From: Vitrella brassicaformis CCMP3155
Taxonomy: Eukaryota > Protista > Chromerida
NCBI GenBank assembly: GCA_001179505.1
Contig: CDMY01000841.1
Location: 1-16,048 of the forward strand
DNA: 16,048 nucleotides
Direction of reading: 5' to 3'
Shown here: piece by piece, positions 1 through 16,048 of the stretch
How positions within the stretch are numbered: position 1 is the stretch's first letter
Layout: the number at the start of each line of letters is the position of its first letter
The notes under the pieces: model-generated
What the model was told of the DNA's origin: nothing
Database searches by the model: none
What the model saw: the letters and a program-made list of their open reading frames with translations, nothing else
Program-made: the position numbers and the translations under genes

Positions 1-25
1 ATTCATTTGCCCGCGCGTGCGTCAG

Positions 26-3000
26 GGTGTCAAGTTCGAAGACGCCGTGGTGCAGCGTTTCCCGGCGGCCACCGACCTCGTCAGCCGCCTCCTCACCTAC
101 TACCCCAACGACAGACTGTCCTCAGGTAGGTCGCACAGAGAGAGGAGTTCTGCCACCTGGGTGCCTTGCGAGACATTTCCGGTGTCATGTGTGTGTATGT
201 GTGTGTTGTGTCAGCTCAAGAGGCGTTAGATCACCCATGGTTTGGGCCGTCCTTCTTGGGCCGCCCCTACCCCCTCACCATGCCAACCATGTCGCCCCAT
301 CAGGCCATGAGCCAGCCTGCAGCCCCTGGCCAGCAGCAGGGCAGCGCCAACAGCCCATCGCACATGCACAATCCCACTGGTGGTCCCTTGTTGCCCATGC
401 CACCCATGACGCCCACCGGCAGCTCCCCTGTGCACAACCCATTCGCCCACGTGTCGCCGAACGCATCGCCATCCCCGCTGACACCGCGAGCACAGTCGCT
501 GGAGCTGCCCCACGACGGCCACCCCGTCCACCCACATCGGCAGCCAGTAAGCAGATGAGATACGCACACCCACACAAAAGACTTGGGGGCGGAGATCATT
601 TGGAATGTGTTGTGACTTCGTGTGTGTCTGTGAGTGTCCGATGCAGGCCCTGACAGTTGAGGTGGGGAACCATGCGTCCAATCAGAGCCAGGGCAGCTCA
701 CCCACCCCGCAGCCCAGCCCCACTCACCAGCAGCAACGCCACAACACATCCGGGAGCGACAGTGCGGAGGGCCTCATCTCGCCCAACGCCATCAGCCGTC
801 TGGACCAGGCCATCAGACACACCGTGGATGTTGACTTGGGTGGGGAGGGGCTGGTGTCCATGGGGCTGGTCGGCATGGGCCATGAGGGTGGTGACGACGG
901 GCGGGCAATGGACATGGACGGGGCAGATGGCCGCTCCTTCACCGACGCACACAGCAACCTGGGAGCCGGCACTGCTGGTAAGTCAGGCCTGCAAGGCACC
1001 AGAGCACGTCGCACCACGACCATAGGAGTGAGTGTCATGCATTTACGTGTCTGTCGTGATTGATGCTCTTCAGAGTTCATGAGTGCAGTGCCCTCGCACT
1101 CCACTGGCCCCGCTGATGTGACCAACTTCAACAGCGCGCCGCACATCTGGGGACAGCAAGGTAGATAGACTGACTCCCCGGCACACACCAAGAGAGTCTC
1201 GTGTTCTCAATTCGTGTATGTATTTCCCTGCCTCGTTCGTTCCATCAGCTCGTGGGTTGGTGAGCCCGACGCTCGGTCACGGCAGCATGACGGTGGGCAG
1301 CAGCGGATCGGCGCCCTTCGGCTCATCTCACGTGGCCACCCTCCCACTGCCCCCCGCACCGCAGCCCCTATCGCCCGGCATCACACAGCTGGGCCCCCAC
1401 ATCCAGGGCAACGGCAGTGGGGGTATCCTGTCGGCATGGGAGGACTCTCGGCCACAGACCATCACCGCGCTGCAGATGACCGGGGCCGCCGGGCAGCAGC
1501 AGCAGGACTCGTTCGCGTTGCCTCCGTCCTCTCTATCGCTCATGGATGAGGGGCAGGGTGCCAGTGGGGCGGGGCGGGGGCAGGGACAGGATGCGTCTAG
1601 CGGCAGCACTGGCACAGGTGGGTGGGTCTGAGGGTTGGCTTGGTGGTGCTCACTCACGTGTCTCGCTCGTGTCTCGTTCTTATCGAGCAGGTGGCGCCAA
1701 GTTGGTTCCTATTGGTCGCAGTCGGCAGGCGGGGGGTGGTGGTGCCGGGCCTCAGGCGAATCCCAACCAGGGTTATCACACAACATACAGATACAGACAC
1801 TGCACCACACGCAAACTCAATGAATGGCTCATATGTTTGTTTCGTCCGATGGGTCCGTGTGGGGCTCGCTCGGCTGCATGTGGATCAGACGCCTTGGCTG
1901 GCGGGCAGGGGCAGGACGCAGGGGACGCCAGCCAGCATAGACACAGCCACCAAGGTACAGCTTTACTTACAGACACACAGAAATCCACCCCCACTTAGTT
2001 GATTGATGGCATTGCACTCGGTGTACCTTACTTATTCTCTTCTCATATGCTTGTTCGTTCGATCAGTTGTCGACACCACTGACCACCCTGCATCACCAGA
2101 TGGATCGTCTCGCTTCTTCCCGCTAGGGCCCCACCCGCCCGTGGCGCCGCTTGAGGAGCCCGTCGTGTTTGAGGAGGAAATGGAGTTCAGCCCCGACCAC
2201 ACCCACCCACCACGCACCCACCAGGACGACGCTACCATGACCAACGCGCAGCAGCACCAGCCTCAGCAGCACCAGGGCGGGTGCGACCGGCTGTTCGGGC
2301 TGCAGCAGATGTTCGGTCTCATGACGGGCGGCGCCGAACGGACCGCACCGCCCCCACACAACACTGGACCCATCACTGCAGGTCAGGCCCTGTCCTGTCC
2401 GTGTGGCCAAAGAACACATACATCACATCGTGGAAGCCTTGGTGACTCACCATCTTGTGGTGTGTGTTTTGGATGCATGGATGGATGGATGGGTGGATGC
2501 AGCCATGCGGGGATGGGGTATTGGTATCGACGGGATGGGTTTCGCCATGCAGGCTGGCGACACGCGAGAGATCGAGAGGGGGGCTGGCGGCTGGGGCGGT
2601 GACCGGCGCCGCAGCGCCACATCGGATGAAGCACCGGCACATGGCGGAGGAAGGTCCGGCGGACAGGCCCGCCAAAGTAAGCGGCCATGCAGAGAGAAAC
2701 ACCGGACACCAGCCGCCATCTGCCACTGTCTGTCGTTGTCTTGCACATTGTCATGTCGTCCTTATCTATCAGGTCCCTGGCTGTCTCTCTGTGGCGTGCC
2801 TCGCCCCAACCAGAACCATCCCTTCGAGGAGCTCCACGAGTACAACCCCAGTGCAGGACCTTCCGCATCCTACATCCAGCAGCACCTCCAACAGCACCAT
2901 CAGCAACACCAGCACCAGCAGCAGAGCACCATCCTGCTGCCCCCATTCCTGAACAATGACACCAACACCGACCACCCCAGTCCATCGCTCAACGCCCCGG

Positions 3001-3317
3001 CCACCTTTCACCATGGCGGCCCCAGCAGCTCGCCCAACAGTCCACCCCACCCCACACCGGCATACGCAGAGGACAAGACCAACCGCCATCCGTCTGCTCC
3101 CGTCACGCCCCCAGGTCGGTCGGGCAGGCGGGGTGGTTTGGGGCCGATCGGCTTCTCGTTCCCGAGATGGACCGCCGGCCGAACCACACCACCCCCTGCG
3201 CAGTCGGTGTCTACCCAGGACGGCCAGAGCCCCAACTCACAGCATACCTCGGGACCAACGTCGAGCGCACAGCCGAGGGGGGCCACAACACAGGGGCAGA
3301 GAGACCGCCGCCAGTGA
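26..3317 (+). CDS. 5'-truncated Ser/Thr protein kinase (CMGC-like: CDK/MAPK/GSK3/MAK type), with the end of the kinase domain plus a ~755 aa disordered tail. Exons: 26-125, 215-546, 647-977, 1074-1160, 1249-1617, 1691-1771, 1889-1954, 2067-2381, 2503-2676, 2773-3317
   Basis: Splicing 125/215 gives ATDLVSRLLTYYPNDRLSSAQEALDHPWF, matching kinase subdomain XI (DLxxxLLxxDPxxRxxAxEALxHPWF). All nine introns are GT-AG and phase-compatible. The exons sum to 2400 nt with no internal stop, ending TGA at 3315-3317. The catalytic core lies upstream of the window, so the subfamily is not resolvable. Tail exons rest on frame and splice-site continuity only. Confidence 0.8.
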
Positions 3318-3446
3318 CTGACGCGCTGCATAGCCGCTATGCCCAGAATGGATGGATGGATGGATGTGCATATGTACGTGTGTGTGTGTGGCCGGGCGAA
3401 TTCGTCGAAGGATGGCTGGCTGGCTGGGTGTTTATAGTGAGTGAGT

Positions 3447-3477
<31 letters not shown>

Positions 3478-3930
3478 CGAGAAAGGACGAAAGGAGAGCA
3501 AGAGCAGGAAGAGCAGGAAGAGAGAAAGAGGAGAGACAGAACGAATGGTCGGTCGACGTCTAGAGGCGTGGCGTGTGTGAGAGCCAGCGAGCCGACTGAT
3601 AGATCCGGGAATGAACGAATGAACGATGACTGAGGATGAATGACTGCCTGAAGCCAACCAAATCCGTCCATCTCAATAAGGCCTGCAATGCCGATGGGTT
3701 AGTCCATGTAAGCACACATAACATACAGCAGCCGTCTGCACAGATGTCTGCTGACACAGTGGCTGGCAGAAAATACACAAATCCAATACACACATGGCCT
3801 GCCTGCCTGCCTAAGGCCACACACGGCAAAACCCTTGCCACCTGCCGGCCGGCCTGCCTGCCTGCCTGCCTGCCTATAGGGCAAACAACGACCAAAGTCA
3901 TCCATGAAGACAGGCACTGACTGACACAGA
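3318..3930. other. 613-nt convergent intergenic / double 3'UTR region with (GGAT)n, (GT)n, purine-rich and (GCCT)6 tracts
   Basis: Lies between the kinase TGA (3317) and the Sushi-gene TAA (3931). GGAT runs at ~3349-3364 and ~3449-3478; (GCCT)6 at 3852-3875. Poly(A) sites are not identifiable. Confidence 0.75.
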
Positions 3931-6900
3931 TTAGAGGCACTCTAGCAGTTTTTCCCCGCTGTCCGACCACTGGCCCATCCAGCAGACCATTCTGTGCCTC
4001 TTGACCTTATATAAACCGTGCTCATCCTCATACCAGCCTGCAGGCGTCTTCCCGCCCTCACCCTCAACCCCCACCGTCTCGGCGGCCGTCAGCTCCCCAA
4101 TGCTCTCCGGACTTTGTTTGTTAAAGAGGTCTTCTCTTCTTGATGGATCATACCAGCAGAGCCGGAACACATAGAGGACTGACGCGTGTCTGTCAAGGCC
4201 AGGCTCCTTGGCCTTCAGTGATGCCACTGTGACGTCACGAGGGAACTGTTTGGGGTCGGGGGATGGCTTATCGGGCGATACCGAGACCGTCAGGTTAGAC
4301 AGATCCGCCAATGCGGGATCAGGACACACACCTGACAGATACACAGAGACACACACACATACATAGGGTGTGTCTTCTGTCTGCGTTGGTCTCTCTGTGT
4401 CTCTGTGTGTCTCTGTCTGTGTTGACTGACTTGAGCAAGCATATGGCAGGGCGTCAAAACTGCCGGCCCTGCAAGTGAGGTCGTGTGGTGGGTTGTCCTG
4501 GCCCTCAGGCAACGCCCCCTGGGGCAGCGCGGGGAAGAAGTTGGCATTGCAAGCCACAGTCACCACAGCTCCGTAGGGCAGCAGCGGCGCCACCGCACCC
4601 TTCCCCGACTCGGGTGTCTTGTAGGCCTCTTCGCCGGCCGCGTTGAGCAGCACGCTGCCGTTGGTCCATCTGTAGGTGCTGCCCACGTTGAGCAGAGACC
4701 TTTCACTCTCCACACCCACACACTTGGCTGAAATGACGAATGTCCAGAGGGCATGACACACATAACAGACACAGATTGATGGATGGATCAGGCAGGCAAG
4801 AACGGGAGGAGAGGACAGAGAAAGAGAAGGAGCGAGCAGTGTCTATCTGTCTGTCTGTCTGTCTCTCCCCGGCCCGAGTCGATTACGTACGGTTGCAGAC
4901 GAGTCTCTGTGAGGTCCACTGTCCGTCGACGCAGAAGACGATGTCCGACTCGCCGCCCGACTCGGGACCCGCTATCTTCACGGACCAGTCCCAACTGACA
5001 CACACAACACACACACAGCACATCACATACACACACCGATGGCCATGCATTGAGGGAGGAAGGGAGACATATGTATGTTGTGGTCCTCCCCTCTGCTGTG
5101 CTTCTGCCTGGCTGCCCGGCTGGCTGCCCGGCTGGCTGCCTACATGCATTTGCCGGCGTCAGGGTCCGATGCAGAGATGGATGCGTTGTTTTCGCAGCAT
5201 CTGATGGTCCTGTTGGCGTTGTCGTACACCATTGGGGGGTCCTTGCCCTCGACAAGGTGTGTGCCGAGGTACTCTAGGCGGTAGGCCGGCCCGAAGGACT
5301 CGGAAATGTCCTCCTGGGGATCGGGAGTAAGCTCAGGACACGTCTCTGATGAGTGAGTGAGACACAAAAACGATTGAGCACTGTGACGTGTGTGTGTGTG
5401 TGTGTGTGTATTGTGGTTTGTACTCACTGAAGCATTCGAGTGTTCTTTCTTCCCAGCTGCCATCGAGACACCGGATGAGCTGCTGCGGCTGGGGCGACCA
5501 ATCGGCTGGCGCGCCGTCAGGCACAGACTGAGGAGGAAAACAAGAAAGCCATCCATCCATCCATCCATCCATTACATAAGAAGGTGCGTGCGAGCGGGGT
5601 CCCTCCGGCGCCTATCTATATCTGTGTGTGTCTGTGGGTATACCTAACGGAAGGTAGTAGTCCCCACAGCGTATGATGGCCGACCCCTGCCCCCTGGTGT
5701 AGAGCACCTTATACCGGTCGGTCGTCACCACGACGGGGTCGTGATCCTCGAGGAATGTTATGTAGTCCACACACGCCTCTGATGAATATGATGTTCGAAC
5801 CAATCAATCAATACGCACACACACCAACACGAGGGAAGGCCTCATTCCGGTCGGCCAGTCGAGTGCTCCCTCCCTCCCTCCGTGTGTTCGGTGCAGCTCA
5901 GCTCACTTTCGCATCTGAGTGTGGGTTTCCACCACTTGCCGTCCGAGCAGTGGATCTCCTCGAGAGACTGGCCGGCCGTCGACGTGTGGTTGCCCGCACA
6001 CGTGATGATGGCCCTGCACCGTGGGTCGCCTCCAGGCCCTGCACCAGATACGCACTCTTGGGCTCAGGCAGCACCGAATCCACCACCTTCGGACAATTGC
6101 CTACACACACACAAACAAACACACACACACACCGACAAGAGGAAAAGAATGCCGAGAGCCGACGACAAGTGAGCCAAACGGACAGACGGATGTCATGTCT
6201 CCTGCCTGCTAGTGCCTGCCTGCAGTGGTCCTTCCTTTGTTTACGGACCCACTCACCCTTGCATTCGATTTGGAAGTATGTCCAATTGCCGTCAACGCAT
6301 TCGCTCTCGGCCATGGTGGTCTCGGTCACTGGGGAGAAGCCCGCCGTCCCGTTGCATGAGATGAATCGCTTGGCGTCGTGTGCGAATGAGTCGACACATG
6401 CCTGCCTCTCCTTGGGGTCGGCGTCGGGGTTGAACAGCACCTTGGCACGGTGTGGGCACTCGTCACGGTCATCGGGCTCGATGACCAGCCGGCCCTCCTC
6501 CAGAGAGGTGCGGTCCACATAGGGCGAGTCACGGAAGTAATCACACGGCACTGAAGGAAAAAGCGGACAAGGACAGACAGGACGGAAGGTGAGGTGGCCT
6601 GGCCCCCCGGCTGGTCTGGTCATTCATTCATTCATGTGTGTGTGGGTATCTGTCTGTCTGTCTGTCTGCGCATGGTATGGGGTCTGCCTGGATGGCTGGA
6701 TGGATGGATGTGTTTGTCGCGGCCGTTTGGCTTCTGGACGGACTTACACATGCATTTGAGTGTTCTCATAGACCACTCCCCGTCGACACACGTGACGAGC
6801 TCCGGGTCGTCGCCCGTGGCGTTGAGGTAGCCCATCTCGCACCTCAGCTCCACATTGCTGAGGTGGTGATAGTGCACCGACGACTGGTCCCCCCCTGCTG

Positions 6901-9900
6901 CAACGGCACCCTCAGGCGGCGTCACTCTGTCGGAGGGCGAGTCGATGACCTCGATGCGGTCCGGCTTGACATACGCTGGACATTCCTCTGGACGGGTGAT
7001 GGGTGGGTGGCACAAAGGACATAGTGAATGAGCATTGTCCTGTGGTGGCATGGCAGCTTAGCTTGCTTACTGGTGCACCAGCTGGTGAGGGCGGTCCAGT
7101 TGCCGTTGAGACACCTGCTCTCGATGTAGCTGCCGTTGCCCATAGAGGTCTCCACGGGGAAAGGCTCGTCGTGCTCGGCGGCGTTGCAGCTCACACGCAC
7201 CACATACTCGTCGTCATACAGATGGGAGCGGTTGATGGCCGGCTCGACGATGTAGGCCTCGCCATTATGGAAGGCACTCAGATTGTGGAAGTCGTAACCG
7301 TGACACTTCTCTGTGGGCAGGCAGTCCATGCAGACAGAGCAGAGACGCATGACATGAGGCAGACACACGTGTGGATGCATGTCCCTACCCTTGCATCTGA
7401 TTTCCCGAGGGCTCCAGGTGCCGTTGATGCACTCGACAATGTCGAAATCACGGTCGGGGTGGTTTGCGGCCCACTCAGGGTCCTCGGTGCCCTCCCTGCA
7501 CCCAATGTACCGCATGGCGCCGTGCGGAGATATATATATATTACTTCCTCGTCGGCCGGCCGGTCGGGGTCGACCTCGCTATCATAAATGAGGGTGGGCT
7601 TCCCCGGCGGTGCGCCGCCCTTGGCCTTGAGCTCTCGCTTCTTCTTGTTGGGGGGAATGTTGACAGACACCAGATAGGGAGTCTTGTCGGGGTCACCCAG
7701 CAAGGGGTAGGGGCGGCACTTGGCTGCACACATCGCATCGCACACACAGAGGGCAGAGGGAACGCATGCAGTTCACTGGGTGTGGTGTGTGGGCAGATAG
7801 ATTGTCGGTCGGTCACCGATGCATTGGAACTGTAGCTGTTCCCAGTGTCCCTCGACGCAGTGAAGTGTCTGTGTCTCGTGCTGTTTGGCGGCCGCCTCCT
7901 GCAGTGCCCCGCCCTCCTGCTTGGCGATGCTGGTGGCCGAGTCGGGGATGTAGCACCACTTCCACTTGGTGGGCGAATGGTCCTCCAACCCTGCACAAGT
8001 GCAATAAGTGCATCAGGGTGTCCGTCCGTCCGTATGCGCGCTTTGCTTTCATCAACGAGATGGGGTGTATGGTGTTCTGTTCACTGACTGGGGTATCTGT
8101 CGCATCCGATAGTGATGCTGTCTCCCTCCTTGGCGTACTGGCTCTTGTACAGACCCGTGATGATCTCACCGTCCTGCGGGGGGTGGTGGTCGAAAAACGG
8201 GGGACACAACGCTGCATGCATCGAGAGGCAGACAGACAGACAGCCAAGGAACCAACCGCCCTTTGCTTTGCACCCGCGATACCCAGCCAGCCAGCCAGCC
8301 ACAGATGTGATGTGACGTCTCTCCCTCTCCCCTACCTACCTCTGCACTGGAGGATCTTCTCAGTCCAATGTCCGTCGAAGCACCGGATGACCTCACACTT
8401 CCGCGACCCCATCTCATTGGCCAGCTTCTTGCTCTCACCGGCGTAGTCCACATCCACAGGCTGCGTGTCCTTATCAGCAGGCTGCGCTGATCCCACCTCC
8501 ACCACTGCCGTTGTCGACGCTGCCCCCCCTCCCCCTCCCCCTCCCCCTTGCCCTCCCGCACCAGCCTTTTCGGACGTGGAGCCCCCAAAGTGTGTGCGCT
8601 TGAATTTCCCCGGATTGATCAGGGAGCAGTCGACGGTGCTGCGTGGGTCTTCTGGGAGCTCGAACATGGGGCTGTATCCCTTCTCGCAGCCCAGTATGAC
8701 GGCTGACGTGTGCATGGGGTACCGACCCAGCAGCTCCACTGACCCGTCGGGGTCGATCAGGTCACCCTCCGTCAAGATCTTGTACCGAAGACTGTCGGCT
8801 TCGTCGCCCAGCTCCTCGAGATAGCTGTGGCACTTGTCTGCAGACAATGGAAAATATATGGGACACCACACCTTCGTTGTGCCCATGGCTGCGTCAGTGA
8901 GTACGTCTGCAGTCGAGCATGGGTTCGAGTGTGCTCCACTCTCCGTCGATGCATGTGGATATGGAGATCCCCTCCCCAGTGGCGTTGCCGTAGCCGAACG
9001 TCCAGTTGCACTGCACCCGCACCTGTGTCTCGTGGGGGAAGGACTCCTTGTCCTCACCAGACACTATCAGCGCATACGCCTCAGACCGAACCTGGTACGG
9101 AGGACAGTCCTCTGAACAGACACATGGACAGGGACAGGGACGTCTCTCTCTGTGTGTGGCCCGTTCGTTCGTTCGTTCGTCTGCATGGTGCCTGCCCGTA
9201 TAATCACTCACTTCTGCATCTGAAGTCGACAGGTGTCCAAGATCCGTTGAAGCAGGAGGCCCGGGCGAATCCTGGGTTGGCAGGGAGTGAGGTCATGCCC
9301 TGCACGCACTTGATCTGCCTGTACGCCCCGTGTATGGTGCTCTCGGTGCCGTCGGGGTCCTCTACTATATAGCGGCTCGTGTTGAAGGCATCGTACGGGA
9401 AGGGGCCACAATCCACTGAAATATCGATGGGGCCAATCAAATCCATGATGACACAGATACAGACAGACAGATCAGGTGTGCCGCGTGAGTGAGACAGGCA
9501 TGTATGTGATGTGTGTGGCCACCAGGCAGATGACTTACGGAAGCACTGCAGGTCGACTCTGCTCCAGTTGCCGTAGCTGCAGACGACTGTCTCCTCATAG
9601 CTCTCCTCGGGCTCGTCCTCATCCTCCAGGTGCCTCTGATACCGATGCCTCATCGCCACAGCCATCTCCACAAACGACACTGCAGGCTGGGGCGGTGCTG
9701 GTGCTGGTGGGGGTGGGGGTGGGGNNNNNNNNNNNNNNNNNNNNNNNNNNNNNNNNNNNNNNNNNNNNNNNNNNNNNNNNNNNNNNNNNNNNNNNNNNNN
9801 NNNNNNNNNNNNNNNNNNNNNNNNNNNNNNNNNNNNNNNNNNNNNNNNNNNNNNNNNNNNNNNNNNNNNNNNNNNNNNNNNNNNNNNNNNNNNNNNNNNN

Positions 9901-12900
9901 NNNNNNNNNNNNNNNNNNNNNNNNNNNNNNNNNNNNNNNNNNNNNNNNNNNNNNNNNNNNNNNNNNNNNNNNNNNNNNNNNNNNNNNNNNNNNNNNNNNN
10001 NNNNNNNNNNNNNNNNNNNNNNNNGGGGGTGGTGGGGCTGCCACAGTACCAGATGTGTTGCCGTGGTAGCCGACGGGCTTAAATTCTGCGTCGATGTTGC
10101 AAGCCATGACGGCCTCTGAGGCGTGTCTGAACTTGGGCGGGTTGGGGTTGTCGGGGTCGCCTGACTCGAGGAGGTCCTCCTTGGTGGTGCCGTTGACCGA
10201 CGCTATCAGGAATGCATTGTGCGGCTCGGGGTACGGGAAGGCAGGGCAGTCCTCTGACAGACACAACACACCACACCATCCATCGCTCGACATGTGTCTA
10301 GTACACACATGACATACATGTCTCGTGTGTACTATATGTATGCAGGTAGGTTACTTACTTCCGCAGACGAGTGTTTGGTTGGTCCAGTTGCCGTCATTAC
10401 AGAAGAGGATCTCGCCCTCGGTCCCGCCGACCACGTCGTAGCCTCTATCGTGGTCACACGATATCGTCACTGTCGCGCCGTGCTTCAGCCCGCCATCCTG
10501 GACGTGCTTAGCCACGCTGAGTCGGGAACTCAGAACATGCAGCTGCGCGCACACACAGCGGCCTTTCCATTCCGTCAGCCGGTTGTGTGTGTCGCTGCAC
10601 TGACTGACTGACCTGCACACTGTGGGATGGCTCCCACGGTCCACACGCCGTCGTCACACACGACAGTAGCGACGTCCTGCCCCCCAGTGACCCGCTCGAA
10701 CTGCCTGGCGCACTTGATGGACACAGCGAATCCGTGTCTGAAGGTGCTGTTGGGTGCTAGGAGGTCATCGAGGGCCGGCTTGACCACCCTGTAGTGGTCG
10801 GGCTTGATGCTCGCCGGCCACTTCCATGGACCACACGTCTCTGTAAGTAAGTAAAACAGATAGACAGACGGACAGACACACAGACACATGGACACATAGA
10901 CACATAGACATTTATAGAGTGCGGTGCCATCGACAGGAGCGCGGGATGGAGGGGATGGGCTTCTGACTCCCTCACTTTTGCAGACGAGTCTTGGTTCGGT
11001 CCAGTTGCCGTTGACGCAGACGGTGGTATCAGAGGGGGGCATCTCGGGGTCCTGTGGCGTGTGACCCTCGCCGCACTCCAAGGTCATGGTCACCCCGTGG
11101 CGGTAGGGTGCACTCACACCCTCGGGCATCTTCTTGACGCGATATGCACCCTCGGTGTCACGGACCACGGCGGGCGGCTCAGACACACATTGCTCTGACA
11201 GACACACAGACAAACAGATCCATAATTGAGTAGCCGTGCGGTGCAGTGTCTTGGTTGGCTGGCTGGCTGGCTGGCTCACTCCAGCAGAAGAGTGCGGGCT
11301 TCTCCCATTCCCCGTCGAGGCACGACAGCACATCCTGCCCCTTGGTCTCACCCACGCCCTCGTCCCACCCGTTGGCCGTGTCGCAGTGCAACGTCACCTT
11401 GGTACCGAACGGCTTACCCTCGCCAGCCAGCTCGCTCCCATTGCCCGCAGCAGACGTGTCGTTGGCCGCTCTGGCGGCTGCTGCCGCTGCCTCTGCTGGT
11501 TGTGTGTCCCTCTCAATCATGGCGGCCTTGGTTCGCTGTGAGTGGTGCATCTTGTGCCTGGTGCGCCGCCGTCTGCTCTGCTGTGTGGGAGTGCGCCTGG
11601 GGTGCTGCTGCTGGTGCCGCTGGATGGAGTGGTACAGTGCGTAGGGGTCAAATGTGAAGGTGTGCTGTGCGCCGAACCGCTTGCGGATCAGCTGCACGTA
11701 CCGCACGTAGGCGCTGAGCTTACGCTGACTGCTGCTGGACCCGGTGAGACACGAAGGCCGAGGTGGCGTTGGTGGCAGAGGGAGAGGGAGCTGCCGCGGG
11801 TGTGGCCGTCTCCTCTCCCTCCTCACCTTCGGCATACTCCCATGTGTAGCCGATGTCGCTCACCAAATGATACGGGGGACACGTGGCTGGCAGAGAGAAG
11901 ACAAGACACACACAGATGTTTGGTGCAGCCCTATGTATGACAATTGCTGTGTGGGTCTGTGTGGTTGGTTGTGTCCTGTCATTACTTGAGCACTGCATGT
12001 TGACCCTGGTCCAGCCATAGGTGCCCTTCCCCTCAGCGCACATGATGGCGCTGACGTCCTCCTCGGGGGCTGGCGGGAGGGAGGCGTTGACCTTGTTGGA
12101 GGCAGCATTGAGCTCCTCCTCTTTGCTGCCGAAGCACCGGCACTTGACGATCTCGTACACGGGGTGGTGGGGCCTCGGGTACTTTGGCGGCTTGCACGTC
12201 ACACGGATGAGCGACCCCAAGGTGCGGTTCTCCTGACCCAGGGGCGGCTCCGTGTTGAAGTCATCTTCCTTGCCCTTGGGCAGCTCATAACGCGGGCACA
12301 CACCTGCGCACACCACACCACATACACACACACGCCCACCTCACAGGTCTGTCTCACGTGTCTCTCTTATGTATGCATGTTCGGGAGACAAAGTGCTCAC
12401 TCACCCCAGCACTCGAGAATGAGCGAGTCCATGTGCCTCTGTCACATGTGATGATCTGCTCCGAGATGGCCCCCTCGATGGCCGGTGGGCGGTAGTTTGG
12501 CGCACACCGCACCAGCCGTGCCGACCCGGACACAAACGTGCCAGCCTCGGTGGCGTTGCCCGTGGTGGCTGCGGCCTCCTCTGGGGTCACGTCGAGTGTC
12601 GTGTTGGGGTGACCGCCCAACGAGGAGTTGTGTGTGTAGGGGAGAATCTCGTAGGCCTCCATCTGATGTAGACAAGCAGCATCCCTCTTGCCCGCCTTGA
12701 CGGGGATGCACGCCGGACAGTTCACTGCACACACGCACAGACGTATGGTATTGAAGGGAGAGACCCATTACATTTCTGCCTGCCAGCCGTTTGTGCGTGA
12801 CGTGAGCTGAATGACAGACCTGCGCATGAGAGTGGGAGTGCGGCGAGGACGCCGTCGTTGCATCTGAGTGTGGCGCTGGTGGCTGCGCCCAGAGTGGGGG

Positions 12901-15475
12901 GGATGGGTTTGACGCCGTCTCTGCACTTGACGGTGATGTCGTTGCCGTCCTCGATGAGGAAGCTGTCAGGGTTCATCTTGGTCTTGGTCTCCACCACCAG
13001 GGGGCAGTCGCCGGACTCCTTGGGGTTCTCCCCACCGCATCCCAGGTTGGTCTTGCGCCACCACCACTCGTGCGTCACCTCACACGCAGCTGGGGACAGA
13101 CATGACATAGGTATGAGACACATGAGACACAAGCAAGCGATTCACTCACTCACAGCTGCTGTGAAGTGGATAGCTAATCTGCTTCCCAGCTAAGTTAGCT
13201 ACGTACCTCTGCACTCCATGACCCTTCTGCTGTATGCCCCGGCACGTGCACTGCACCCTTTCGGACGTCTGGCCTTTGGCGCTGTCGCGTCCCCGTCAGC
13301 TCCTGCAGACGGTGTGGGATCACCACCCTCGCTCGCCGCCCCATCCCTCTCCATGAGTGTGACATTCGACTCCATCAGCTCCTCGGCCTCCAGAGCCAGC
13401 CCCAGGAAGAGCAAAGGATCCTCGTAGCCGAAGCCGCCAGTCATGGGGGGCGGCTTGGCGCCGCATGTGAGCTCGTCCATTCGGTCGACGAGTCCGTTTT
13501 GCTGCTGGTAGAAGCCGGCCGGCTGGTCGCACATGAGGTTGAAGGTGAAGCCCTGGGGCCGGGTGCGGAGCCAGTTGCCCTGGATGACCTTCTGCGGTGT
13601 CTTCTCCTCCCCTGTGGCGTGCAGGGGGCTGGCCAGATACCGGTCGGGGGTGCCGGCGGGCAGGACGTGGCTGTAGGGCGGACACCGCACTGCCGACCGA
13701 CAAGAGGGAGGGCACACAGCACAGAGAGAGACATAGAGATTCATTCATCCGATCCATGGATGGGATCGTGTCTCTATTGTTTGGATGTCATGTGTTTGTG
13801 TGTGTGTGCGTACGTAGGCAGTCGCATCCGCATCTGTCCCGCTCGCTTTGGTCGAGGTCCTTGACGGTGGCGTCGCACTCCTCCAGCTCGGGCTGGAACA
13901 CACCGTCACCACACGTCTGACGAACCGACGACGCTGCAGACAGACAGAAGAGAAAGCATCAGCAGCCAGCCAGTGCAGGGCAGGGCAGTTGTGTGTTGTG
14001 CCCTTCTTACATTCGAAGAGCTCAGGGTTGGTGGGCTGCCGCTGGATCTCCAGGTAACCCAGCTGACCTGGTGGACACACCAATCCCATCAATCCCATCA
14101 ACGAATGAATCAATGCAGGCGTCCAATCCTCCCACCATATACACTGCTCCGCTCACGTGAATACTGACTGACCATCGAAGCAGTTATCTCCGTTGGCGTC
14201 GCATCCGATGGTGACTTTGGTGCCGGGGAAGTTGCCATAGCCGTCGTCAGAGGCCAGCAGCTTCAAATACACCTGCGAGTTGGTGACCTCCTTGTTGGCC
14301 TCCTGCAGGTACTTGAGCCGGTACAGCGACATCTTCGGGCGGCATGCGTCCGAGCTGCCCTTGCAGTGCTGCGCGTCCAGAGTCAGCTGCAGCAAGAAAC
14401 CGTCAGGGCTCACCCAGCACGTGGGGATGGTGAAGTCGCCCTCCCCCCCGTCGACGATGATGCCGAACTGGATCTTCTCCTCCTCGGTTTCGTCCCGCTT
14501 GAGGCCGATCTGGAAGCCCCGGTGGTTGTCCAGCAGCACCTGGAAGGTGTCCTTCGCGGGCAGCTTCTTGAGCTTGACGAAGAAGGCAAAGTAGACGAAG
14601 TTGTGGTTCTGGTCCATCAGGGGCACACAGGCGTCGGACAGTAGCGACTGGTCGCCCTTGAACTGCAACCATCCGGCCACCGGACTCTCACCCTCCCTAC
14701 ACAGACAGACAAAAGAAAGAGCGGAATTTGTTTGTCTCTCAGTGGGTGTCGGTCGATTGTGTGTGGCTGGGCTGACTCACTCTGGTGTAATGAGTGCGGG
14801 TGCCTTGGCGACATCGGTTTGCTTGAATCTTATATCATTCCCGCCACTGCGTGGCGCCCACTCTGTGGCCAAGTTGGGGTTGTCCAGCGGGCTGCGCACC
14901 GTGTAAGGCGACACGTCAAGCTTCAGCCCCTCAGTCGCCAGCGCCACACTTTTGTCGCACTTGTCACCATCACCAACACCAGAGTGCAGCTGCACAAACC
15001 CAACTTCCCTCTGAGTCTGAGCATCAGCGAGCTCAATAAACGAATGATGATTTCGATGCGATGAAGACACCCTCGGCCACAATCTCGGCCTTGGTGAGGA
15101 AGCTGCTAAGCTTCTTCTCCCCTGAGCAGCTTGGGTGCTGAAAGCACTCAGCGGCGAGAGACCCAGCAGCGTCGCCCTTCTGTCGATTCCCTTTCTCTGG
15201 CCTGTGGTGGCGAGGGATGAAACGAGCGCTTCATCTTCAGCTGTCAGCAGGGGCTGGTCGTCTGCAGTGCAGGGACCTCCTCGGTCGCTGCATCCCTCCC
15301 GCCTCCTGCCGCTCTGAGAGAGCAGGTGGGCGTTGTTGGTCGAGTTGAGGCTGCTCTGCTGTGCTGCTGCAGGGCCCTCCTTGACGGTAGCATGTAGGTA
15401 GAGCCGGGGCGACATGAGAATCGACGCGAGAGTGCCGAACGCCAGTGCAAGCGCCGCGCCTGCACCCCACGCCAT
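3931..15475 (-). CDS. Large secreted LamG + cysteine repeat + 22x Sushi/CCP-like protein (~2,800 aa), frame-disrupted at six sites (possible pseudogene, exon-skipping gene or assembly errors). Exons 5'->3': 15475-14781, 14696-14173, 14067-14011, 13933-13814, 13689-13207, 13089-12820, 12724-12405, 12303-11986, 11886-11280, 11194-10976, 10840-10613, 10542-10359, 10253-9539 (spans gap), 9415-9212, 9111-8905, 8837-8340, 8211-8089, 7990-7817, 7723-7389, 7310-7071, 6987-6748, 6550-6257, 6100-5907, 5778-5644, 5527-5428, 5345-5144, 4994-4891, 4727-4431, 4331-3931
   Basis: ATG at 15475-15473 has an in-frame TGA just upstream (15487-15485) and is followed by a hydrophobic leader. There are 28 GT-AG introns and a stop TAA at 3933-3931. 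The recurrent module pattern is C-P-x-(Y/F)...HG-x3-(I/V/L)-x-C...C-x-(D/N)-G-x-W-x4-(L/I/F)-x-C, e.g. CFDGHWTEKILQC, CNDGNWTNQTLVC, CVDGEWSMRTLKC. Confidence 0.9.
5108..5140. repeat. 12-nt tandem repeat (CTGGCTGCCCGG) x2.7
   Basis: Read directly; lies at the 5' end of intron 5143-4995 of gene 2. Confidence 0.9.
5388..5409. repeat. (GT)11 intronic microsatellite
   Basis: Read directly; lies in intron 5427-5346 of gene 2. Confidence 0.95.
5549..5572. repeat. (CCAT)6 intronic microsatellite
   Basis: Read directly; lies in intron 5643-5528. Confidence 0.95.
7530..7541. repeat. Coding (TA)5-6 microsatellite in gene 2 exon 19, coinciding with a frame switch
   Basis: Minus strand reads GAA GTA A TATATATATA TCT CCG CAC GGC: 11 nt between in-frame codons. 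Confidence 0.9.
9725..10024. other. Assembly gap (300 N) inside a polyproline-coding G-run tract of gene 2 exon 13
   Basis: Run of n flanked by ggtgggggtgggg and gggggtggtgggg. The minus-strand frames on the two sides differ by 1 nt, so the gap length is nominal. Confidence 0.98.
11257..11276. repeat. (GGCT)5 intronic microsatellite
   Basis: Read directly; adjacent to the donor at 11279. Confidence 0.95.
13814..13933 (-). other. Cysteine-rich CGDG...EECD repeat (myxobacterial disulfide repeat / DUF4215-like), single copy in exon 4
   Basis: Spliced translation SSSVRQTCGDGVFQPELEECDATVKDLDQSERDRCGCDCL. Confidence 0.7.
14011..14696 (-). other. LamG / concanavalin A-like (pentraxin-type) beta-sandwich domain, exons 2-3
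   Basis: GWLQFKG...FVYFAFFVKL...FQIGLK...IQFGII...TKVTIGCDANGDNCFDGQLGYLEI resembles the LamG-3 hallmarks F(T/S)xxFWVK and IG...F.G.(I/L)..(L/V).I. Recognised by eye, no HMM run. Confidence 0.65.
15389..15475 (-). other. Predicted N-terminal signal peptide (MAWGAGAALALAFGTLASILMSPRLYLHA)
   Basis: Uncharged Ala/Leu-rich run directly after the first Met. No C-terminal TM or GPI-like tail is seen (the protein ends KLLECL*), so it is probably soluble secreted. Cleavage site not computed. Confidence 0.7.
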
Positions 15476-15928
15476 GAGAGCCACTCACTCGACAGGCGAT
15501 GAAGGCGGGCAGGGCTCGGTCGGTCGGTCGGTCTGTCAGCAGACCACGGCCATCGAGCGACAGCCCAGCCGATGCGATTTGGTGCCTCGGTGCGATGCAG
15601 ATGCGATAAGTGGGCTTCAGCCACTGTGCAATGCCGGTCTTGCGAATCAGTGAGGCGCCCTTCAGGGTTTAACTTCTCGCAATCTGTCAGAATAGGGGGG
15701 AGAGAGTCGGGGAGAATGGTGAAGAGAGGATCTGCCGGGCGGTCAGTCCCGGATAAAGGATTAAGTCAATGCAACGTAAGGTCTGTGGATTTTGTGGAGA
15801 GTCCACGTAGGACATGTAGTATGCGTCAGTCCATCCTGTCTGACGTCCTGTCCGCCATGGCCTGTCTCATGGAACGGACAGACTCAACAGCCGTCCTGTC
15901 TCACAGATCAGTGGATCGTCGGTCTATG

Positions 15929-15948
15929 AACCCTAGACCCTAAACCCT
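15929..15948 (+). repeat. Degenerate telomere-like (CCCTAAA-type) repeat, about 2.5 units
   Basis: aaccctagaccctaaaccct. Very short, so it may be chance. Confidence 0.35.
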
Positions 15949-16048
15949 GGGCCGACTTGCACTTCTGACACCCCCTCTCAAGTCGGTGCAGAGTTAGGAC
16001 ATGAATCTCCATAAAACTATAACTGAAACTCCGCGCGTGAGGTCTTCG

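What the first reader, a model, noticed from the sequence alone, without database searches (positions are those of the whole stretch)
5428..12724. Six frameshifts in an otherwise intact 29-exon gene, all in exons that can be skipped in frame
Seen: six exons bounded by phase-1 splice sites (exon 25's acceptor phase inferred from its upstream donor) have lengths not divisible by 3: exon 7 (320 nt), 9 (607), 12 (184), 19 (335), 23 (194) and 25 (100). In most, the conserved Sushi residues switch frame mid-exon. All 56 splice dinucleotides are canonical and I found no nonsense codon in the module frames. Because flanking introns are phase 1, skipping these exons leaves a continuous ORF with about 16 modules. 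Inference: this could be a module array whose cassettes are switched off by slippage while the gene stays functional, giving length or allele variation in a secreted protein. A young pseudogene or consensus errors are equally open. Caveat: about 76% of the sequenced CDS is in skippable exons, so all six landing there has a chance probability of about 0.2.
Basis: partly seen in the sequence, partly recalled or inferred. Interest (0 to 1): 0.8.

Follow-up and report, generated by a model that had tools for sequence, protein, structure and literature searches.

The report
Frameshift-riddled Sushi-repeat gene in Vitrella
A 29-exon gene for a secreted Sushi-repeat protein in the alga Vitrella brassicaformis really does carry six reading-frame breaks in the public assembly, but they look like ordinary gene decay (or assembly slips), not a built-in switch for turning protein modules on and off.

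Summary
The window is the whole 16,048-bp scaffold C841 of Vitrella brassicaformis CCMP3155; it is not human. On the minus strand lies one 29-exon gene (15475..3931) for a signal peptide, an all-beta N-terminal domain and about 22 divergent Sushi/CCP-like modules.

Exon lengths are 320, 607, 184, 335, 194 and 100 nt. All 56 splice dinucleotides are GT/AG. No stop lies in the module frames, and both halves of each broken exon look coding in different frames. The sixth break sits at the exon 24/25 boundary and cannot be assigned to exon 25. The assembly gap lies in exon 13; both flanks are open in the required frames, but continuity is unknowable.

The slippage-switch reading is not supported:
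- Only one break lies in a slippery tract, (AT)6.
- Splice sites of broken exons are not weaker than the others.
- Having all six breaks in skippable exons has a chance probability of about 0.2.

The public protein CEM35124.1 stops at the exon 9 break.

My estimate is young pseudogene about 0.5 and assembly indels about 0.3; raw reads are needed to separate them. Two paralogous arrays on large scaffolds carry nonsense and cysteine-loss lesions. Earlier notes of this scan report similar broken Sushi arrays elsewhere in this genome.

The parts
3931..15475 (-). Whole 29-exon gene: signal-peptide-like N-terminus, all-beta domain (exon 2), Cys-rich linker (exons 3-4), about 22 Sushi/CCP-like modules, stop TAA at 3933-3931
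   Evidence: Exon table; introns; per-exon translations; Pfam Sushi hits on exons 10, 11, 12, 21 and 23; public protein P0001 matches exons 1-9
12405..12724 (-). Exon 7, 320 nt. The frame switch lies between the module Trp and the last Cys (12440-12429). The entry frame stays open to the exon end.
12399..12400 (-). Second GT of the tandem donor GTGA|GTGAGC. Using it makes exon 7 324 nt long and in frame, at the cost of the fourth Cys. The public model CEM35124.1 uses it.
11280..11886 (-). Exon 9, 607 nt. The switch interval is 11752-11720. The entry frame ends at TAA 11722-11720, where the public protein ends. The exit frame holds a long insert and the second half of the module.
10359..10542 (-). 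Exon 12, 184 nt. The switch comes right after the first Cys (10523-10509). The entry-frame stop is TAA at 10510-10508.
   Evidence: the exit half matches Pfam Sushi and paralogue modules
9539..10253 (-). Exon 13, holding the assembly gap (9725-10024) inside a Pro-rich insert. Both flanks are open in the frames that the splice phases require.
7389..7723 (-). Exon 19, 335 nt. The switch interval 7547-7509 contains the longest dinucleotide repeat of the coding sequence.
7530..7541 (-). (AT)6 microsatellite inside exon 19, the only slippage-prone tract at any of the six breaks
5907..6100 (-). Exon 23, 194 nt. The switch interval is 6032-6009, between the first and second Cys.
   Evidence: the exit half gives a weak Pfam Sushi hit
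5428..5778 (-). Split module made of exon 24 (5778-5644, 135 nt, weak donor GTATAC) and exon 25 (5527-5428, 100 nt). The break is at their junction. The entry frame hits TGA at 5519-5517. An alternative in-frame acceptor makes the exon start at 5505.

Best explanation
The locus is a recently inactivated, decaying member of Vitrella's family of large secreted Sushi/CCP-array proteins. Six small indels of 1-2 nt, real in the sequenced culture, each shift the frame inside one module. One of them is a gain of one AT unit in an (AT)n tract. With constitutive splicing the mRNA meets a premature stop, at the latest in exon 9, where the public gene model ends. No full-length protein is then made.

Shown: the six breaks exist in the deposited assembly, the ancestral frames are still clearly readable, and the splice signals are intact. 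Inferred: that the breaks are real in the DNA, and that the gene is non-functional.
For: - The assembly is Illumina-only, with SGA read correction, velvet at k=75 and three rounds of ICORN. Five of the six breaks lie in unique, complex coding sequence where such an assembly rarely errs.
- The exon 19 break coincides with the only (AT)6 tract in 8.2 kb of coding sequence, a typical natural slippage site.
- Other arrays of the family on large scaffolds carry lesions that cannot be indel artefacts. C385 has TGA at the conserved Trp plus one frameshifted 224-nt module exon. C253 has an in-frame TAG and a Cys3-to-Trp change. Decay is therefore common in this family.
- A third array (C954) shows at least 10 consecutive intact module exons, so frame breaks are not universal in the assembly.
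- The public annotation ends the protein at the exon 9 stop.
- No cDNA-type protein of this gene is in the collection.
- The break positions fit random placement (p about 0.2).
Against: - The lesion spectrum is odd for neutral decay: six frameshifts, but no nonsense codon, no lost module cysteine (116 Cys codons) and no hit splice dinucleotide. With 5-10 substitutions per frameshifting indel the chance of this is 0.06 to 0.004.
- The lesions I found in two paralogous arrays were one frameshift against three substitution-type lesions. Against six to nil here, Fisher's one-sided test computed by hand gives p = 0.033; the sample is tiny and detection was ad hoc.
- The scaffold is small and has an unclosed gap in the same gene. 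IMAGE gap closing was done after ICORN polishing.
- No read or transcript data could be reached.
Confidence: 0.5

Rival explanations
1. The six breaks are indel errors of the draft assembly, and the real gene is intact and encodes the full array of about 22 modules.
For: - The defects are indels only. All cysteines, splice sites and codon bias are perfectly preserved on both sides of each break.
- The scaffold is only 16 kb and has an unresolved gap in the same gene.
- IMAGE gap closing followed the ICORN polishing.
- Earlier notes of this scan list many indel-broken genes in this assembly; I did not check them.
Against: - The data are Illumina reads with read correction and three ICORN rounds.
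- Five breaks lie in unique, non-repetitive exon sequence, whereas contig ends and gap closures would be expected in the microsatellite-rich introns.
- Six errors in 7.3 kb would need a very poor patch.
- A paralogue shows 10 intact exons in a row.
Confidence: 0.3
2. The breaks are real, but the gene still yields protein. Broken symmetric exons would be skipped, or nearby alternative splice sites used (donor at 12400, acceptor giving an exon start at 5505, and others). The product would be a shorter array of about 16 modules.
For: - All flanking introns are phase 1, and the skip junctions create no stop.
- In-frame alternative sites exist for every broken exon.
- The tandem donor at exon 7 is used in the public model.
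- The alternative exon 25 acceptor gives a normal Cys2-Cys3 spacing of 19 residues.
Against: - Stop-free in-frame alternatives are plentiful by chance in this GC-rich DNA: 2 to 184 per exon.
- Splice sites of the broken exons are not weakened (16.4 against 12.9 bits).
- Most alternatives delete a conserved cysteine.
- Skipping exon 25 alone leaves half a module.
- The placement in skippable exons is not significant (p about 0.2).
- No transcript was found.
Confidence: 0.08
3. The breaks are read through by programmed ribosomal frameshifting or another kind of recoding.
For: Three breaks need a +1 shift, and the entry frame meets a stop soon after each (TAA, TAA, TGA). This superficially resembles Euplotes-type +1 shifting at stops.
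Against: - The sites share no motif. The codons before the stops are GCG, GGC and GCC, not AAA.
- The three breaks of the other direction have no X XXY YYZ heptamer.
- Shifting +1 at the first stop reaches the exit frame trivially for any such lesion.
- At exon 25 it would add an odd cysteine.
- No such recoding is known to me in chromerids.
Confidence: 0.02

Closest known systems
Animal complement-control-protein (CCP/Sushi) arrays such as CR1, factor H, CSMD and SVEP1
   Same: Tandem modules with four cysteines and a Trp. Mostly one module per exon, bounded by phase-1 introns, so modules can be gained, lost or skipped in frame. Some modules are split by an extra intron. The animal gene structures are from my own knowledge; the pattern here is shown.
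   Different: The host is a photosynthetic alveolate. The modules are very divergent: only exon 10 passes Pfam's Sushi cut-off. Many carry long inserts. The N-terminus is an unplaced all-beta domain. No function is known.
Pseudogenes in large surface or secreted protein families that evolve by birth and death
   Same: A family member carries several disabling lesions while its overall architecture is still intact. Other members of the same family in this genome are broken too.
   Different: Here the lesions are frameshifts only. The paralogues are only about 30-50% identical per module, and there is no DNA-level second copy. This is therefore an old singleton lineage, not a recent duplicate.
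Contingency (phase-variable) genes switched by slipped-strand mispairing in simple-sequence tracts
   Same: The exon 19 break lies in an (AT)6 tract, where gain or loss of one unit changes the frame.
   Different: Classical contingency loci have long tracts at the switch and one switch per gene. Here five of six breaks have no tract, and (AT)6 is short.
Reading-frame rule of exon skipping, as in dystrophin (Becker versus Duchenne)
   Same: Removing symmetric exons from a modular protein can keep the frame and leave a shorter protein.
   Different: In that case skipping follows deletions or is induced. Nothing here indicates that the broken exons are skipped.

Membership tests
Sushi/CCP (SCR) repeat, Pfam PF00084 | Profile match at or above the curated cut-off (20.7 bits) | tested here: met
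   Exon 10 scores 21.8 bits. Exons 11 and 12 score 19.0 and 20.0, and exons 21 and 23 about 15, all below the cut-off. The other modules gave no hit at E<=0.1.
Sushi/CCP (SCR) repeat, Pfam PF00084 | Four conserved cysteines plus a Trp between Cys3 and Cys4, with an even cysteine count per module | tested here: met
   All modules have 4 or 6 cysteines when read in the module frames. Most show C..G.W....C at the end.
Pseudogene (non-functional gene copy) | Lesions that prevent translation of the full product | tested here: met
   There are six frame breaks in the deposited sequence, and the public model is truncated at exon 9. Whether they are real in the DNA could not be tested.
Pseudogene (non-functional gene copy) | Relaxed selective constraint (dN/dS near 1, loss of conserved residues) | tested here: not met
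   No conserved cysteine, splice site or codon-bias signal is lost. dN/dS cannot be computed, because no close homologue exists. This allows only a very young pseudogene.
Pseudogene (non-functional gene copy) | No functional transcript or protein | not testable with these tools
Slippage-switched contingency locus | A simple-sequence tract at each switch site | tested here: not met
   Only exon 19 has one, (AT)6. The other intervals hold at most 3-4 nt homopolymers, as common as one per 24 nt in this coding sequence.
Slippage-switched contingency locus | Tract-length heterogeneity among cells, reads or strains | not testable with these tools
   No reads or second strain could be reached.
Regulated cassette exons (in-frame skipping) | Symmetric intron phases around the exon | tested here: met
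   Phase 1 on both sides of exons 7, 9, 12, 19 and 23. Exon 25 qualifies only by inference.
Regulated cassette exons (in-frame skipping) | Weaker splice sites than constitutive exons, or observed skip junctions | tested here: not met
   A leave-one-out weight matrix gives broken exons 16.4 bits against 12.9 for the others; one-sided p for 'weaker' is 0.96. Skip junctions were not testable.
Programmed ribosomal frameshifting | A shared shift motif (slippery heptamer, or AAA-stop as in Euplotes) | tested here: not met
   The six intervals share no motif.

The most novel reading that the evidence does not exclude
The breaks are real and tolerated. Because almost every module is a symmetric phase-1 exon, broken modules would be dropped or trimmed by splicing. 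The gene would still give a shorter secreted array, so indels would act as a module-level way of varying length in an algal surface protein family.
Probability: 0.07. Interest if true: 0.6.

Novelty: new member of a known kind. Interest (0 to 1): 0.2.

Why it matters
As it stands this is a routine case: one more broken or mis-assembled member of a large family. Three things are useful:
- The public protein CEM35124.1 (A0A0G4GW61) is a truncated model of a much longer 29-exon gene.
- Vitrella's Sushi-array family shows frequent decay, which bears on how the extracellular protein repertoire of chromerids is counted.
- The frameshift-only lesion spectrum is a concrete reason to re-check this scaffold against reads.

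If the breaks were real and the gene still produced protein through in-frame skipping, it would show module-level tolerance of indels in a protist surface protein.

Tried and rejected
- **Hidden intron in exon 9** (donor GTGAGC at 11863 with several acceptors). Rejected: the stretch scores as coding in two different frames (0.51 and 0.76 per codon, against at most 0.37 for introns in their best frame).
- **Upstream acceptor for exon 12** (exon start 10562). It would leave a 50-nt intron, below the 67-nt minimum of this gene.
- **Alternative splice sites in general.** There are 2 to 184 stop-free in-frame options per exon, so their existence proves nothing.
- **Second copy or haplotig.** No DNA-level copy exists elsewhere in the genome.
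- **Transcript evidence.** Three word searches with exon-bearing ORFs were blank. The 90% cluster of the public protein has one member. The exact look-up of P0001 was blank, as was a 28-nt exon pattern in the metagenome contigs.
- **Crude acceptor/donor pairing to score paralogous arrays**. It was too noisy and was replaced by a chain-and-hole method.
- **Fold of the exon 2 domain.** The four-sequence alignment gave pLDDT 52.8 and no PDB match. It is all-beta, but the LamG-like label remains unproven.
- **Telomere-like 14-mer at 15931-15944.** One copy with one mismatch, weak.
Full report
**Source.** The window is contig C841 of its assembly, 1-16048, so it is a whole small scaffold. The assembly has 72,700,666 bases in 1064 contigs. 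Those are exactly the figures published for Vitrella brassicaformis CCMP3155 (Woo et al. 2015, PMC4501334). The protein found with exon 2 is CEM35124.1 / A0A0G4GW61 of that organism, on a 16,048-bp contig. The contig is not human.

**Gene model.** Reading the minus strand gives 29 exons, from the ATG at 15475 to the TAA at 3933-3931.
- All 28 introns are 67-197 nt and GT..AG.
- Exon 1 starts with a signal-peptide-like segment.
- Exon 2 is an all-beta domain that neither Pfam nor a low-confidence fold search could place.
- Exons 3-4 are a Cys-rich linker.
- Exons 5-29 encode about 22 modules with 4 or 6 cysteines and the C..G.W....C ending.
- Pfam's Sushi model passes its cut-off on exon 10 and comes close on exons 11 and 12.
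- Nearly every module is one exon between phase-1 introns. Three modules are split (exons 17/18, 24/25, 26/27).
- The public protein (985 aa) contains my exons 1-9 exactly.

**The observation.** Exons 7, 9, 12, 19, 23 and 25 are 320, 607, 184, 335, 194 and 100 nt.
- In the first five, the first cysteines lie in the frame set by the upstream intron and the last cysteines in the frame needed by the downstream intron.
- A codon model trained on the intact exons (GC3 77%) locates the switches at 12440-12429, 11752-11720, 10523-10509, 7547-7509 and 6032-6009.
- Each half scores 0.48-0.91 per codon in its own frame. Intact exons average 0.66 and introns 0.005 in their best frame.
- Exit-frame halves match intact modules of paralogues; for example, exon 12 reaches E = 2e-10.
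- The sixth break is at the exon 24/25 boundary. Exon 25 is open in its exit frame from its first base, and the entry frame hits TGA at 5519-5517. The lesion may therefore sit at the 3' end of exon 24, whose donor GTATAC is the weakest of the gene.

**The gap.** Exon 13 holds the 300 N (9725-10024) inside a proline-rich (CCCCA-type) insert. The 5' flank is open in the entry frame and the 3' flank in the exit frame. The sequenced parts total 415 nt. Whether the exon is in frame depends on the unknown true gap length.

**Tests of the slippage-switch idea.**
1. Only exon 19 has a slippage-prone tract in its break interval: (AT)6 at 7541-7530, the longest dinucleotide repeat of the coding sequence. 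The other intervals hold only 3-4 nt homopolymers, which occur once per 24 nt anyway.
2. Splice sites of broken exons are not weaker than the rest: 16.4 against 12.9 bits, with p for 'weaker' = 0.96.
3. 76.5% of the 8188 sequenced coding bases lie in exons flanked by phase-1 introns, so six of six has p = 0.20.
4. Skipping exon 25 alone leaves exon 24 as half a module.
5. In-frame alternative sites exist for each broken exon but are abundant by chance. A hidden intron in exon 9 is excluded by its coding signal.

The public model uses the second GT of the tandem donor GTGA|GTGAGC at exon 7, which costs the fourth cysteine. It then ends at the TAA in exon 9.

**Real lesions or assembly errors?** The assembly is Illumina only: SGA correction, velvet at k=75, GapFiller, three ICORN rounds, then IMAGE gap closing, REAPR and re-scaffolding.

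Against assembly error:
- Five breaks lie in unique, complex exon sequence. There is no second DNA copy.
- The microsatellites that would break contigs are in the introns.

For assembly error:
- The lesions are indels only. A random substitution makes a stop with probability 0.04, and there are 116 Cys codons and 112 splice bases.
- With 5-10 substitutions per frameshift, seeing none of these hit has probability 0.06-0.004.

**Paralogue control.** I inspected the paralogous arrays I could fetch.
- C385 has TGA at the conserved Trp (315409-315407) and one frameshifted 224-nt module exon.
- C253 has an in-frame TAG (near 112500) and a Cys3-to-Trp change (near 110476).
- C954, which is co-linear with this gene, shows at least 10 consecutive intact exons.

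Real decay therefore occurs in this family, and there it is rich in substitutions: one frameshift to three substitution-type lesions, against six to nil here. Fisher's one-sided test, computed by hand, gives p = 0.033, but the sample is tiny.

Weighing a high family prior for pseudogenes against the odd spectrum, I put a young pseudogene at about 0.5, assembly indels at about 0.3, splicing rescue at about 0.08 and recoding at about 0.02.

**Transcripts.** No cDNA-type protein covering exons 1-9, 10-11, 19 or 28-29 is in the protein collection.

**Verdict.** The attractive interpretation is unsupported. The finding is an ordinary broken gene, or a draft-assembly defect, in a family that other notes of this scan also found to be full of broken members.

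Noticed in passing
G000:C385:315407-315409 and about 319021-319244 (L045, minus strand): Another Sushi array on a 453-kb scaffold has TGA exactly at the conserved module Trp (CINGT*SHAYLDC). It also has a 224-nt module exon whose consensus switches frame.
   Followed up: partly
G000:C253 about 112489-112515 and 110462-110488 (L041, minus strand): A third array has an in-frame TAG between Cys2 and Cys3 of an otherwise perfect module. In another module Cys3 is replaced by Trp (VIKWNDGIW).
   Followed up: partly
G000:C954:27700-34500 (L039, plus strand): This is a co-linear paralogue with matching exon 2-, 5-, 6-, 8-, 10-, 11-, 12-, 13-, 14- and 15-like exons. It has no counterpart of exons 7 and 9 between its neighbours, so module content differs between paralogues. 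It also has an N gap in one module.
   Followed up: partly
window introns, e.g. 10975-10841, 5143-4995, 6256-6101: The introns are built from simple repeats, with CA/AC-rich 5' parts and GT/TG-rich 3' parts ending in TGTGTG..CAG, plus (GGAT)n, (CAGG)n and (GACA)n tracts.
   Followed up: no
window 15931-15944 (minus strand): A single telomere-like 14-mer, TTTAGGGTCTAGGG, lies about 460 bp upstream of the start codon. It is weakly above chance (4 of 200 shuffles) and might hint at a subtelomeric position for this small scaffold.
   Followed up: partly
window 1-3300 (plus strand): The scaffold starts inside another gene: the C-terminal end of a protein-kinase domain (..DLVSRLLTYYPNDRLS / AQEALDHPWF..), followed by long Pro/Gln/His-rich low-complexity exons.
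   Followed up: no
window 8525-8557 and 11440-11640 (minus-strand exons 16 and 9): Several modules carry long low-complexity inserts between Cys2 and Cys3: a Gly run in exon 16, a Gln/Arg/His-rich stretch in exon 9 and a Pro run at the gap in exon 13. This makes exons of 500-700 nt for a module whose core is about 60 residues.
   Followed up: no
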